A stretch of DNA of 63,803 nt, filler included, from Octopus bimaculoides (GCF_001194135.2; 4 parts of 4 records of this genome joined end to end with filler, not necessarily neighbours in it); one strand, 5' to 3'; shown: positions 8,423 to 10,160, counted from the first letter of the whole stretch. The notes: generated by a model not told the origin, from the letters alone. Made by a program: numbers and translations.

Positions 8423-8506
8423 CTCAATAGCTTTTCCGTCCGCATCATACTGCACTGGTAACTTAGAACCAGCGATAAGACGAGGAGAAAACATAGTCGA
8501 AGCCAT
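8423..8506 (-). CDS. CCDC93: First coding exon of a divergently transcribed gene, probably CCDC93 (MASTMFSPRLIAGSKLPVQYDADGKAIE)
   Basis: ATG at 8506 in a good Kozak context (aacATGg), 28 open codons, phase-0 donor GAG|gtaagg. The peptide resembles invertebrate CCDC93 N-termini as I recall them (..GSK..Q(F/Y)D.DG..I. before VETREDEEQ). Exon 2 is not visible in the window. Confidence 0.55.
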
Positions 8507-8517
8507 GTTCAAAGGTA

Positions 8518-8613
8518 CCGGAAGTTGACATACGGTGCAGAAACCGGACGTTTATGTCCCACACCGGGTGTTCACATGAGACTTTTGTCTTCTCTTCCTC
8601 ATCACCACTTCCG
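8518..8613. promoter_or_regulatory. ETS-type motifs upstream of the minus-strand first exon
   Basis: CCGGAAGT at 8518-8525 and ACTTCCG at 8607-8613 in a CpG-containing patch. Confidence 0.45.
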
Positions 8614-9367
8614 CTTTCAGCATTTATTTATTTATGAATTTATAAAAGAAATATTTTGAAAGAAATCAAATAGAAATTATGAGTATTTTAATTTTAAATT
8701 TTTTACTTTGTGATGTTACTTTTCAACGAAAAATAAAGATAAAAAGATTGGCATTTATTTCGCGGGATTGGTGGTAGAGGGGGAAAAAAGTAAAGTATGT
8801 TATAAAATAAAATNNNNNNNNNNNNNNNNNNNNNNNNNNNNNNNNNNNNNNNNNNNNNNNNNNNNNNNNNNNNNNNNNNNNNNNNNNNNNNNNNNNNNNN
8901 NNNNNNNNNNNNNNNNNNNNNNNTATATATATATATATATATATATTAGGGATAAAATCCAAAATTACAGGTAAAAACTCAATTAAAATCAATTTATTAA
9001 AAATTAAAATTAAATTAAGTTGCTATATAGTCGCCTTACAAACAGGTAACATGTACGTATAAATGTGTGTATATATGTAGATATATGTATATGCGTATAT
9101 ATATATATATTTATTTGCATGTGCGTGCGTATATACACACGCATGTATGTATAATACTTCAGGTCGCCTTTAGAAGTTCTAATATTTTCGCTTTTTCAAT
9201 CGACATATTTCTTTAGCATCCAATTATTTTCAAAAGCAAAAAAGATGAATATTTATTTATTTATTTATTTATTTATTTATATGAGTAACACGGTGACACC
9301 GTAACCTCTGCTCTTTTTTTCTTCAACTCTCAACTCTGACCTCTCTCCGCTCTCGTAACATACGAGT

Positions 9368-9418
9368 GCGGGAGGGGTGGCGTGACATCGTCTTTCAGTG
9401 AAGCTCTCTGATTGGCTG
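9368..9418 (+). promoter_or_regulatory. Putative INSIG promoter: GC box + SRE + NF-Y CCAAT box
   Basis: GCGGGAGGGG (9368-9377), GTGGCGTGAC (9377-9386, reverse of RTCACNCCAC) and CTGATTGGCTG (9408-9418). Confidence 0.55.
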
Positions 9419-9989
9419 AAACTTGTCGGCTGAGTCCTTCAGCCGTAGCTTTTGTGGCACGACGTGAAAAATCTGGTGATCGGCTGCCTTCCTCCCCTTC
9501 ACACTCTCTCTCATTTCTGTTTCTCCCTCCCTTTGTTATACTTATACTGTCTCTTTCATCCTTCTCTCTTGCTCTTTATGTTGTATCTATTGTATTGTTT
9601 ACTTACTCTCTATATAGACACGCTCTTACTTTCTTTCTCACTCTCTCCGTCTTTCACTCGCTTACTCATACTATTTATCTTTCACCTTACTCCCTTTAGT
9701 TTATACACATTCTCTCCCTATCTTGCTCCTTGATTTTATATTATTTACTCAACCTACTACTCCTTCATAAGAGAGCGATAGAGAGTAAGAGAGAGAAATA
9801 TAGAGACTCATTGAGAGAGTGAACGAATATTAGATTAAATAGACACAGGAACAGATAGAGAGAGACGCAAAAAGATAGATTGAGAGAGTAGGAGAGAGAG
9901 CAAAATATAGAGACTTAGTGAGAGAGTGAGTGAATATTACATTAGATATACACAGAAAGAAACATAGAGAAAGAGAGAGAGAGTGAGTG

Positions 9990-10160
9990 TGTCTGTTTTG
10001 TATCTATTATTGTCGTTGTGGCAGCGCGTCATTCCTTCCAAAATTCTTCGATTCTGTCCACATCGTCAATTATATTTCTTCTCATTATCCACCAGAAGTC
10101 TTCAGGAGACATCCAAGACCATCTTTTAATCAGCCGATTCCTCCACAAACAACGAAAAAG
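9990..10160 (+). other. INSIG: Putative non-coding first exon of INSIG (3' part; the 5' boundary may lie as far upstream as ~9450)
   Basis: ATG-free unique sequence ending in a strong donor AAG|gtaagt (10161). Vertebrate INSIGs also have a non-coding exon 1. Confidence 0.5.

What the first reader, a model, noticed from the sequence alone, without database searches (positions are those of the whole stretch)
8423..10160. Head-to-head CCDC93-like / INSIG pair mirroring human CCDC93-INSIG2
Seen: a minus-strand ATG exon with a strong donor and ETS sites, ~0.9 kb from a plus-strand promoter and first exon that leads to INSIG. Established: human CCDC93 and INSIG2 are divergently oriented neighbours on 2q14. 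CCDC93 belongs to the CCC/Commander complex that recycles LDLR, and INSIG controls SREBP/HMGCR. Inference: an ancient bilaterian microsynteny coupling sterol uptake and sterol sensing, compressed here into a bidirectional promoter despite heavy cephalopod genome rearrangement. The CCDC93 assignment rests on my recall of invertebrate N-termini.
Basis: partly seen in the sequence, partly recalled or inferred. Interest (0 to 1): 0.8.

Follow-up and report, generated by a model that had tools for sequence, protein, structure and literature searches.

The report
Conserved head-to-head CCDC93–INSIG gene pair
In this octopus sequence the first exons of CCDC93 (an endosomal recycling factor) and INSIG (the sterol-sensing brake on SREBP) point away from each other about 1 kb apart, an arrangement also found in a limpet, a clam, a brachiopod, an annelid and a priapulid, so it is a real, old example of a known kind of conserved gene pair.

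Summary
RNA contigs and reads from Octopus bimaculoides show that the minus-strand exon 8423-8576 (ATG at 8506) is transcribed. It splices to an exon that begins VETREDEEQNV, which is identical to residues 14-24 of human CCDC93. Its 28-aa peptide aligns with the first exons of annotated CCDC93 genes from five phyla. The plus-strand exon ending at 10160 splices exactly to 22927, 10 nt before the INSIG start codon.

The same CCDC93(-)|INSIG(+) arrangement, with no called gene between, is present in Patella, Solemya, Lingula, Owenia and Priapulus. It is absent in Capitella, Lineus, Saccoglossus and amphioxus. Papers place human CCDC93 beside INSIG2.

A 30-nt block (an NF-Y box plus CAGCYGAGTC) is shared by the lophotrochozoan spacers. 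It lies 116-280 nt from the CCDC93 ATG in the other species and 909 nt away in octopus. The octopus spacer is therefore expanded by repeats, not compressed.

The assembly gap at 8814-8923 lies in the spacer, cuts no exon, and could not be bridged. The proposed link to sterol biology is untested.

Verdict: a new member of a known kind (a conserved 5'-5' microsyntenic pair). Interest is moderate.

The parts
8423..8576 (-). CCDC93 exon 1. The coding part is 8423-8506 (28 aa from the ATG at 8506). The 5'UTR runs to 8514 in raw reads and to 8560-8576 in contigs.
   Evidence: The peptide aligns with CCDC93 first exons of other species.
8417..8422 (-). Splice donor GTAAGG of CCDC93 intron 1. Exon 2 (VETREDEEQNV...) is not in the window.
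   Evidence: The loose end beyond 8421 reads GTGGAAACTCGTGAAGATGAGGAACAGAATGT on the mRNA strand. This sequence is absent from the window. No coding ORF was found in 1-8422.
8518..8525 (+). ETS-type site CCGGAAGT, 4 nt from the 8514 cluster of RNA 5' ends.
   Evidence: single copy in the window, 0.28 expected. A similar site lies 26-46 nt from the CCDC93 ATG in Patella and Lingula.
8607..8613 (-). Second ETS core CGGAAGT, 31-47 nt upstream of the distal CCDC93 5' ends at 8560-8576.
8614..9289 (.). AT-rich spacer between the two promoter patches. It contains the assembly gap 8814-8923, a (TA)n tract, and a very high-copy repeat at 8924-9035.
9290..9480 (+). GC- and CpG-richer patch (GC 0.52, CpG o/e 0.9 against 0.48 for the piece). 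Proposed INSIG core promoter.
   Evidence: A few RNA reads start at about 9428.
9377..9385 (-). SRE-like element TCACGCCAC (consensus TCACNCCAC), 21 nt from the NF-Y box.
   Evidence: It is the only copy in the window, but 0.89 copies are expected by chance, so the position is suggestive only.
9407..9436 (+). Conserved block TCTGATTGGCTGAAACTTGTCGGCTGAGTC: an NF-Y (inverted CCAAT) box plus CAGCYGAGTC.
   Evidence: Alignment. A profile built from Patella, Solemya, Owenia and Lingula hits the window only here, E=5.4e-5.
9589..10160 (+). INSIG exon 1, non-coding. The donor is AAAAAG|GTAAGT at 10160. Contig 5' ends lie at 9589, 9676, 9822 and 9877. Read depth rises at about 9966, and a few reads start from about 9428.
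10161..22926 (+). INSIG intron 1 (12.8 kb, within the 5'UTR). It is full of SINE-like and LINE-like repeats and contains six assembly gaps.
22927..23111 (+). INSIG exon 2, with the start codon at 22937.
24341..24465 (+). INSIG exon 3
25140..25306 (+). INSIG exon 4
27571..27670 (+). INSIG exon 5
28486..28524 (+). Coding part of INSIG exon 6 (YDRKEETKQKDE, then stop). The five coding pieces sum to 606 nt, equal to the 201 aa of P0001 plus a stop codon.
   Evidence: The locus length of 5588 nt fits 22937-28524.

Best explanation
Two ordinary protein-coding genes of Octopus bimaculoides start back to back here.

CCDC93 encodes a subunit of the CCC/Commander endosomal recycling complex. It is transcribed leftward from TATA-less starts at about 8514 and 8560-8576, each just downstream of an ETS-type site. 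Its first exon encodes 28 aa and splices to an exon outside the window.

INSIG encodes the ER sterol sensor that retains SCAP-SREBP. It is transcribed rightward from a GC-richer patch at 9290-9480 that holds an SRE-like element and an NF-Y box. Its long non-coding first exon ends at 10160 and splices over 12.8 kb to the ATG exon at 22927.

Shown:
- both gene identities;
- both splice junctions;
- the divergent orientation;
- the same neighbourhood in five other protostome genomes;
- a 30-nt promoter block shared by the lophotrochozoan spacers.

Inferred:
- In the bilaterian ancestor the two core promoters lay within about 300 bp and were interleaved. Any breakpoint between the genes would then damage one promoter, which is why the pair survived even the cephalopod genome reshuffling.
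- In octopus the spacer has since been stretched to about 0.9 kb by AT-rich and repeat DNA without breaking the pair.
For: CCDC93 identity:
- RNA contigs and reads cover 8421-8576 and continue with a sequence encoding VETREDEEQNV.
- This is identical to residues 14-24 of human CCDC93 chain 8f2u_N.
- The 28-aa peptide is 38-62% identical to the first exons of annotated CCDC93 genes. All of them end ...E|V at the same intron position.

INSIG identity and structure:
- The 10160-to-22927 junction is seen in 43 reads and 4 contigs.
- The protein is 100% identical to O. bimaculoides INSIG2-like P0001, which carries PF07281.

Synteny:
- A CCDC93_N/CCDC93_CC gene on the minus strand lies directly upstream of INSIG on the plus strand in Patella, Owenia, Lingula, Solemya and Priapulus.
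- For human, PMC2869348 and PMC8072367 place the two genes together.

Shared promoter:
- The conserved block lies at 9407-9436.
- It sits 116-280 nt from the CCDC93 ATG in the other species.
- Those species have a 5'UTR acceptor just before the INSIG ATG. Owenia, Lingula and Patella also have a donor 100-160 nt after the block.
- Conserved 5'-5' pairs with short spacers are a described class (PMC3514665).
Against: - No TSS mapping (CAGE or 5'-RACE) was available. The INSIG 5' ends are scattered over about 540 nt, and the most upstream one rests on 3 reads in one run.
- The two GC/CpG patches are about 0.7-0.8 kb apart. In octopus they may act as two independent promoters.
- The gap 8814-8923 was not bridged, so the spacer length and the join depend on the scaffold.
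- The pair is absent in 4 of the 9 other invertebrate genomes that gave a verdict, so the constraint is not absolute.
- Non-coding first exons of INSIG in the other species are predicted from splice signals only.
- The block boundaries were chosen after seeing the octopus sequence.
- Co-expression was not measured.
Confidence: 0.64

Rival explanations
1. The pair is kept together because a shared sterol-responsive (SREBP/NF-Y) promoter co-regulates lipoprotein-receptor recycling (CCDC93) and sterol sensing (INSIG).
For: - The CCC complex sorts LDLR in mammals (PMC4792963).
- An SRE-like TCACGCCAC lies 21 nt from a perfect NF-Y box in the INSIG patch. This is the classical architecture of SREBP targets (my own knowledge).
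- E-box or TCAC-type motifs lie next to the NF-Y box in Owenia, Solemya, Lingula and Patella.
Against: - One SRE match per window is what chance gives (0.89 expected).
- An exact TCACNCCAC next to the NF-Y block occurs only in octopus. Solemya's one exact copy lies about 4.5 kb from its block.
- Commander recycles many cargos, not only LDLR.
- No expression data under sterol change were available.
- The SRE is about 860 nt from the CCDC93 TSS in octopus.
- Most conserved 5'-5' pairs are not functionally related (PMC3514665).
Confidence: 0.12
2. Neutral retention. The two genes are neighbours in several lineages by inheritance alone, without any constraint. The octopus promoters are simply two independent promoters that happen to be close.
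For: - The pair is lost in Capitella, Lineus, Saccoglossus and Branchiostoma.
- In octopus there are two separate GC/CpG patches with about 0.7 kb of repeats between them.
- In human the genes are tens of kb apart (my own knowledge).
Against: - The same order and the same divergent orientation, with nothing between, survive in six protostome lineages spanning Lophotrochozoa and Ecdysozoa.
- One of these is a cephalopod, whose genome is heavily rearranged (PMC9023564).
- A promoter block is conserved in the spacer.
Confidence: 0.15
3. Bystander model. The pair is held together because it sits inside a regulatory block of a developmental gene (engrailed in vertebrates), whose long-range enhancers forbid breakpoints.
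For: In human, INSIG2 and CCDC93 are the other coding genes inside the EN1 TAD (PMC8072367). INSIG1 lies next to EN2 (my own knowledge).
Against: - No homeobox gene was seen within 10 kb of INSIG in any invertebrate locus fetched.
- The spacers are only 1.8-5.2 kb ATG to ATG, which leaves little room for foreign enhancers.
- The conserved element is promoter-like (an NF-Y box).
Confidence: 0.06
4. Assembly artefact. The scaffold join across 8814-8923 is wrong, and the two genes are not neighbours in the octopus.
For: The gap is not bridged by any contig examined. Its right flank is a very high-copy repeat.
Against: - A false join would have to recreate by accident the exact order and orientation seen in five other genomes.
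- It would also have to place the conserved spacer block on the correct side, facing INSIG.
Confidence: 0.03

Closest known systems
Conserved ancestral microsyntenic pairs (CAMPs) in 5'-5' orientation (Irimia et al. 2012, PMC3514665). HSPE1-HSPD1 is one example.
   Same: Two unrelated genes, divergently transcribed, with a short spacer. Order and orientation are kept across phyla, and promoter-type sequence is conserved between them.
   Different: This pair is not named in the main text of any paper in the library. Irimia's supplementary list could not be read, so it may already be listed there. Co-expression was not tested here.
Human CCDC93-INSIG2 neighbourhood on 2q14
   Same: The same two genes are adjacent (PMC2869348, PMC8072367). 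They are divergent by my own knowledge. INSIG2 also has a non-coding first exon (my own knowledge).
   Different: In human the genes are tens of kb apart and lie in the EN1 TAD, with no shared promoter. In octopus and the other protostomes the first exons are 0.1-1.5 kb apart.
GABP/ETS- and NF-Y-driven bidirectional promoters of mammals (PMC2077898)
   Same: TATA-less, with ETS sites at the TSS of one gene, an NF-Y box on the other side, and local CpG enrichment.
   Different: There is no single CpG island. There are two small patches separated by about 0.7 kb of AT-rich repeat DNA. The TSS distance is at or above the usual 1-kb limit.
SREBP/NF-Y composite promoters of sterol-regulated genes (for example mammalian INSIG1; my own knowledge)
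   Same: A TCACNCCAC-type element 21 nt from a CCAAT box, upstream of an INSIG gene.
   Different: This is a motif match only. An exact SRE beside the NF-Y block is not found in the other species, and no functional data exist.

Membership tests
CCDC93 (CCC/Commander subunit) | N-terminal exon peptide homologous to that of CCDC93 orthologues, with the same intron position | tested here: met
   Alignment A1 shows 38-62% identity to 10 orthologues. All exons end ...E|V.
CCDC93 (CCC/Commander subunit) | The transcript continues into the CCDC93_N domain, which starts VETREDEEQNVKL | tested here: met
   The spliced RNA encodes VETREDEEQNV. This is identical to human CCDC93 residues 14-24 in PDB 8f2u_N.
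CCDC93 (CCC/Commander subunit) | The full protein carries PF21673 (CCDC93_N) and PF09762 (CCDC93_CC) | not testable with these tools
   Exons 2 onward lie outside the window. No octopus CCDC93 entry was returned by the protein searches. The transcript contigs of 2.0-2.1 kb fit a protein of about 630 aa.
INSIG (PF07281) | Full-length match to the INSIG family | tested here: met
   The five coding exons give a protein 100% identical to P0001, which is annotated PF07281. It is 75-85% identical to INSIG proteins across animals.
Bidirectional promoter (TSSs under 1 kb apart on opposite strands) | Distance between opposite-strand TSSs below 1 kb | tested here: inconclusive
   CCDC93 5' ends lie at 8514-8576. 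INSIG 5' ends lie at about 9428 (3 reads), 9589, 9676, 9822, 9877 and about 9966. The distance is therefore 0.85-1.45 kb and includes a gap of unknown true length.
Conserved ancestral microsyntenic pair (5'-5') | The same two orthologues are adjacent, with the same relative orientation, in distant animal lineages | tested here: met
   Patella, Solemya, Lingula, Owenia and Priapulus, plus this window. Human adjacency comes from papers. Human orientation was not tested here.
Conserved ancestral microsyntenic pair (5'-5') | Correlated expression of the two genes | not tested
   Both genes are expressed in runs X21 and X22, but no series of conditions was compared.
SREBP-regulated promoter | A functional SRE next to NF-Y or Sp1 sites, with a sterol response | not testable with these tools
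   A motif match TCACGCCAC at 9377-9385 lies 21 nt from the NF-Y box. Chance expectation is 0.89 per window.

The most novel reading that the evidence does not exclude
The CCDC93-INSIG spacer is an ancestral bilaterian two-way promoter whose SRE/E-box plus NF-Y module makes both genes respond to SREBP. Sterol sensing (INSIG) and endosomal recycling of lipoprotein receptors (Commander) would then have been transcriptionally coupled for more than 500 million years, and the 30-nt NF-Y/CAGCYGAGTC block would be one of the few non-coding elements conserved between phyla.
Probability: 0.12. Interest if true: 0.7.

Novelty: new member of a known kind. Interest (0 to 1): 0.4.

Why it matters
The finding gives a clean, RNA-supported annotation of two first exons that are easy to miss: a 28-aa coding exon, and a non-coding exon 12.8 kb from its ATG.

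It shows that a small head-to-head pair survived the cephalopod genome reshuffling. The pair is shared by molluscs, a brachiopod, an annelid, a priapulid and, much more loosely, humans.

The shared 30-nt promoter block makes a compact test case for how overlapping promoters hold genes together. The pairing of a sterol sensor with a factor needed for LDL-receptor recycling offers a simple, testable co-regulation hypothesis. This matters for the human 2q14 locus, where variants near INSIG2 and in CCDC93 have been linked to lipid traits (my own knowledge).

Tried and rejected
- A search with 39 aa plus X found no candidate.
- A PDB search with the 39 aa found nothing. It worked only after I extended the query with the human sequence from memory. 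The printed PDB chain then confirmed the motif.
- A third protein search returned only CCDC93 fragments under 260 aa and no octopus entry. The annotated octopus CCDC93 therefore could not be compared.
- An ORF scan of 1-8422 found no further CCDC93 exon.
- Bridging the gap with DNA unitigs failed, and no PacBio run was listed.
- Loci around INSIG of O. bimaculoides v2 and Argonauta hians did not reach CCDC93, because the 5'UTR intron exceeds the 10-kb flank.
- Sparus aurata insig2 has no gene within 10 kb, so no vertebrate locus could be checked directly.
- Supplements of two synteny papers do not name the pair. Irimia's supplements are not held.
- I rejected the idea that 9407-9436 is merely part of a SINE. 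The SINE copies at 23480 and 23741 share only TTGTCAGCTGAGT and score E=4.9.

Full report
**What is in the sequence**

On the minus strand, 8506-8423 reads ATG GCT TCG ... ATT GAG followed by GTAAGG. This gives MASTMFSPRLIAGSKLPVQYDADGKAIE. CCGGAAGT lies at 8518-8525 and CGGAAGT lies on the other strand at 8607-8613. The former is the only copy in the 29.7-kb piece, where 0.28 copies are expected. On the plus strand, an exon ends AAAAAG|GTAAGT at 10160.

**Organism**

The INSIG protein assembled from the window is 100% identical to 'insulin-induced gene 2 protein isoform X1 [Octopus bimaculoides]' (P0001).

**Is the minus-strand exon transcribed, and from which gene?**

RNA contigs of 2115, 2011 and 2098 nt from three runs end in this exon, covering 8421 to 8560/8576. 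Raw RNA reads of two further runs cover 8421-8514, with six molecules ending at 8514.

Beyond 8421 all of them continue with ACATTCTGTTCCTCATCTTCACGAGTTTCC on the plus strand. On the mRNA strand this gives ...GCT ATT GAG | GTG GAA ACT CGT GAA GAT GAG GAA CAG AAT GT, which is AIE|VETREDEEQNV.

I checked the motif against a solved structure rather than against memory. [quoted passage not shown] The 11 residues after the octopus junction are therefore identical to human CCDC93 residues 14-24.

The 30 nt are not in the window on either strand, and no coding ORF lies in 1-8422. Exon 2 is therefore left of the window or in the gap 525-1393.

The 28-aa peptide is itself homologous to the first exon of CCDC93 elsewhere:
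- Lingula: MASTGGSVFTGRGRAGSKLNVVYDAEGNEIE|V
- Patella: MANPGGSVFAGISSSRLPTQVDTEGREVE|V
- Owenia: MATGSVFAGRGRSGSKYMAVYDEEGHERE|V
- Fish: MAAVSSVFHRVRTGSKIGAQYDQEGNLIQ|VETREDEEQ
- A fly: MANRDVFSKVLPNIKLSTVFNSEGKEIQ|VERREDAEQ

Identity to the octopus peptide is 38-62%.

**Does 10160 splice to INSIG?**

Yes. In 14 and 29 raw reads of two runs, and in contigs of four runs, the sequence after 10160 is CTAGATCAACATGGCAGTCGTCAGATATAT. This is window 22927 onward, directly behind cattgcag. The start codon is at 22937.

The coding exons are 22937-23111, 24341-24465, 25140-25306, 27571-27670 and 28486-28524. They sum to 606 nt, which equals the 201 aa of P0001 plus a stop codon.

INSIG exon 1 is non-coding and long. 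Contigs carry it from 9589 (two runs), 9676, 9822 and 9877. Read depth rises at about 9966. In one run, three reads cover 9440-9719 and, judging from bin depth, start at about 9428.

**The gap**

8814-8923 lies between the two first exons, so no reading frame or splice depends on it. DNA unitigs of three runs extend 31 nt into it from the left and end there. The right flank 8924-9035 has a word depth of 10^5-10^6, which marks it as a very abundant repeat, and it is preceded by (TA)n. No long-read run was available.

The gap is therefore unresolved. It affects only the spacer length and, in principle, the join.

**Promoter anatomy**

Two patches stand out from a CpG-poor background (CpG o/e 0.48 for the piece):
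- 8430-8615: GC 0.44, CpG o/e about 1.0.
- 9290-9480: GC 0.52, CpG o/e 0.9.

Between them lies AT-rich, repeat-rich DNA.

The second patch holds GTGGCGTGA, which is TCACGCCAC on the minus strand (an SRE-type match), at 9377-9385. It also holds a perfect NF-Y box, TCTGATTGG, at 9407-9415. One SRE match per window is what chance gives (0.89 expected), so only its position is suggestive.

**Synteny**

I looked up the genomic places of INSIG orthologues, with 10 kb on each side.

A gene carrying CCDC93_N and CCDC93_CC lies on the minus strand directly upstream of INSIG on the plus strand, with no called gene between, in five species:

| Species | ATG-to-ATG distance |
|---|---|
| Patella caerulea | 1.8 kb |
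| Owenia fusiformis | 4.6 kb |
| Lingula anatina | 3.7 kb |
| Solemya velum | 5.2 kb |
| Priapulus caudatus | 4.0 kb |

The pair is absent in four species:

| Species | Upstream neighbour of INSIG |
|---|---|
| Capitella teleta | NFYB-like gene |
| Branchiostoma belcheri | UGDH |
| Saccoglossus | caveolin |
| Lineus | tubulin |

Sparus aurata, Argonauta and the second octopus assembly were uninformative within 10 kb.

For human, PMC2869348 lists 'DDX18, CCDC93 and INSIG2' as the three genes of one chromosome 2 region. PMC8072367 calls INSIG2 and CCDC93 the other coding genes of the EN1 TAD. That they are divergent and about 74 kb apart is my own knowledge.

The pair is therefore present in Lophotrochozoa, Ecdysozoa and vertebrates. 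That makes it bilaterian in age, with several losses.

**A conserved spacer element**

Next to the CCDC93 start in Patella, Solemya, Owenia and Lingula there is an NF-Y box followed at fixed distance by CAGCCGAGTC-like sequence.

A profile built from those four species alone finds one significant site in the whole octopus window. It is 9407-9436, TCTGATTGGCTGAAACTTGTCGGCTGAGTC, at E=5.4e-5. The next best hit has E=0.39. One caveat applies: I chose the block borders after seeing the octopus sequence.

The block is 116-280 nt from the CCDC93 ATG in the other species and 909 nt away in octopus.

In Patella, Lingula, Solemya, Owenia and Capitella, a polypyrimidine-AG acceptor lies 7-50 nt before the INSIG ATG, as in octopus (10 nt). 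Consensus donors lie 100-160 nt after the block in Owenia, Lingula and Patella. This suggests that INSIG there also starts with a short non-coding exon right beside CCDC93. That is a prediction from splice signals, not RNA evidence.

**Interpretation**

The gene assignments and the head-to-head arrangement are shown. The best explanation for the persistence of the pair is the known one for conserved 5'-5' pairs: interleaved or shared promoter sequence leaves no safe breakpoint (PMC3514665).

The octopus is not a compressed case. It has the widest spacer among the invertebrates examined, apparently enlarged by AT-rich and repeat DNA. Strict bidirectionality is borderline, at 0.85-1.45 kb between 5' ends.

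The sterol rationale rests on the mammalian role of CCC in LDLR sorting (PMC4792963) and on a motif match. It is a reasonable hypothesis, not a finding.

**Novelty**

No paper in the library names this pair as syntenic. The class is well known, and the pair may be in a supplementary list I could not read.

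Noticed in passing
window 8924-9035: The right flank of the assembly gap is an extremely abundant repeat (word depth 10^5-10^6 in four DNA runs), preceded by (TA)n. It probably caused the gap.
   Followed up: partly
window 7947-8030: A near-perfect hairpin (32-nt arms, 97% complementary, 20-nt loop) flanked by (TA)n tracts on both sides, inside CCDC93 intron 1. It looks like a MITE.
   Followed up: no
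window 9480-9990: The INSIG 5'UTR exon consists of a CT-rich half and a GA-rich half, with a 107-nt tandem duplication (9788-9882 / 9895-9989, 76%). Runs differ here (loose ends at 9966, and a 9888-to-9966 joint with inserted letters), which suggests length polymorphism.
   Followed up: partly
window 10160 (donor): In run X43, two contigs continue from 10160 with AAAGATCAACACAAAAGAAGACAGACATTT (agreement 0.67). This sequence is not in the window. It may be an alternative exon hidden in one of the intron-1 gaps.
   Followed up: partly
window 27670 / P0018: If the donor after QLAM at 27670 is not used, the frame reads on for 41 more residues to a stop at 27793. The Octopus vulgaris model P0018 skips exon 5 and reads exon 6 in another frame, losing the last conserved segment. 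This is probably an annotation error or a minor isoform.
   Followed up: no
L014 20865-26613; L003 15384-21714; L004 15036-23499: A NARG2_C (ICE2-like) gene lies tail to tail downstream of INSIG in both Priapulus and Branchiostoma. This may be a second old neighbour pair.
   Followed up: no
L005 8219, L006 5401 and 5451, L008 6290, L010 4899 and 4946: CACGTGA-type E-boxes lie within about 115 nt of the CCDC93 ATG in Patella, Owenia, Lingula and Solemya but not in octopus, which has GGCGTGAC instead.
   Followed up: no
window 13200-14100, 15389-15560, 16206-16610, 17361-17502, 18409-18940, 20328-20590, 26122-26294, 29439-29611: INSIG introns and flanks are packed with repeat families on both strands. 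They include tRNA-like SINE heads, the recurring '...TLNDDDD' reading frame, and reverse-transcriptase-like ORF fragments.
   Followed up: no
L002 2392-2948: In Capitella, which lacks the pair, the gene upstream of INSIG on the minus strand is an NFYB-type histone-fold gene. This is probably a coincidence.
   Followed up: no
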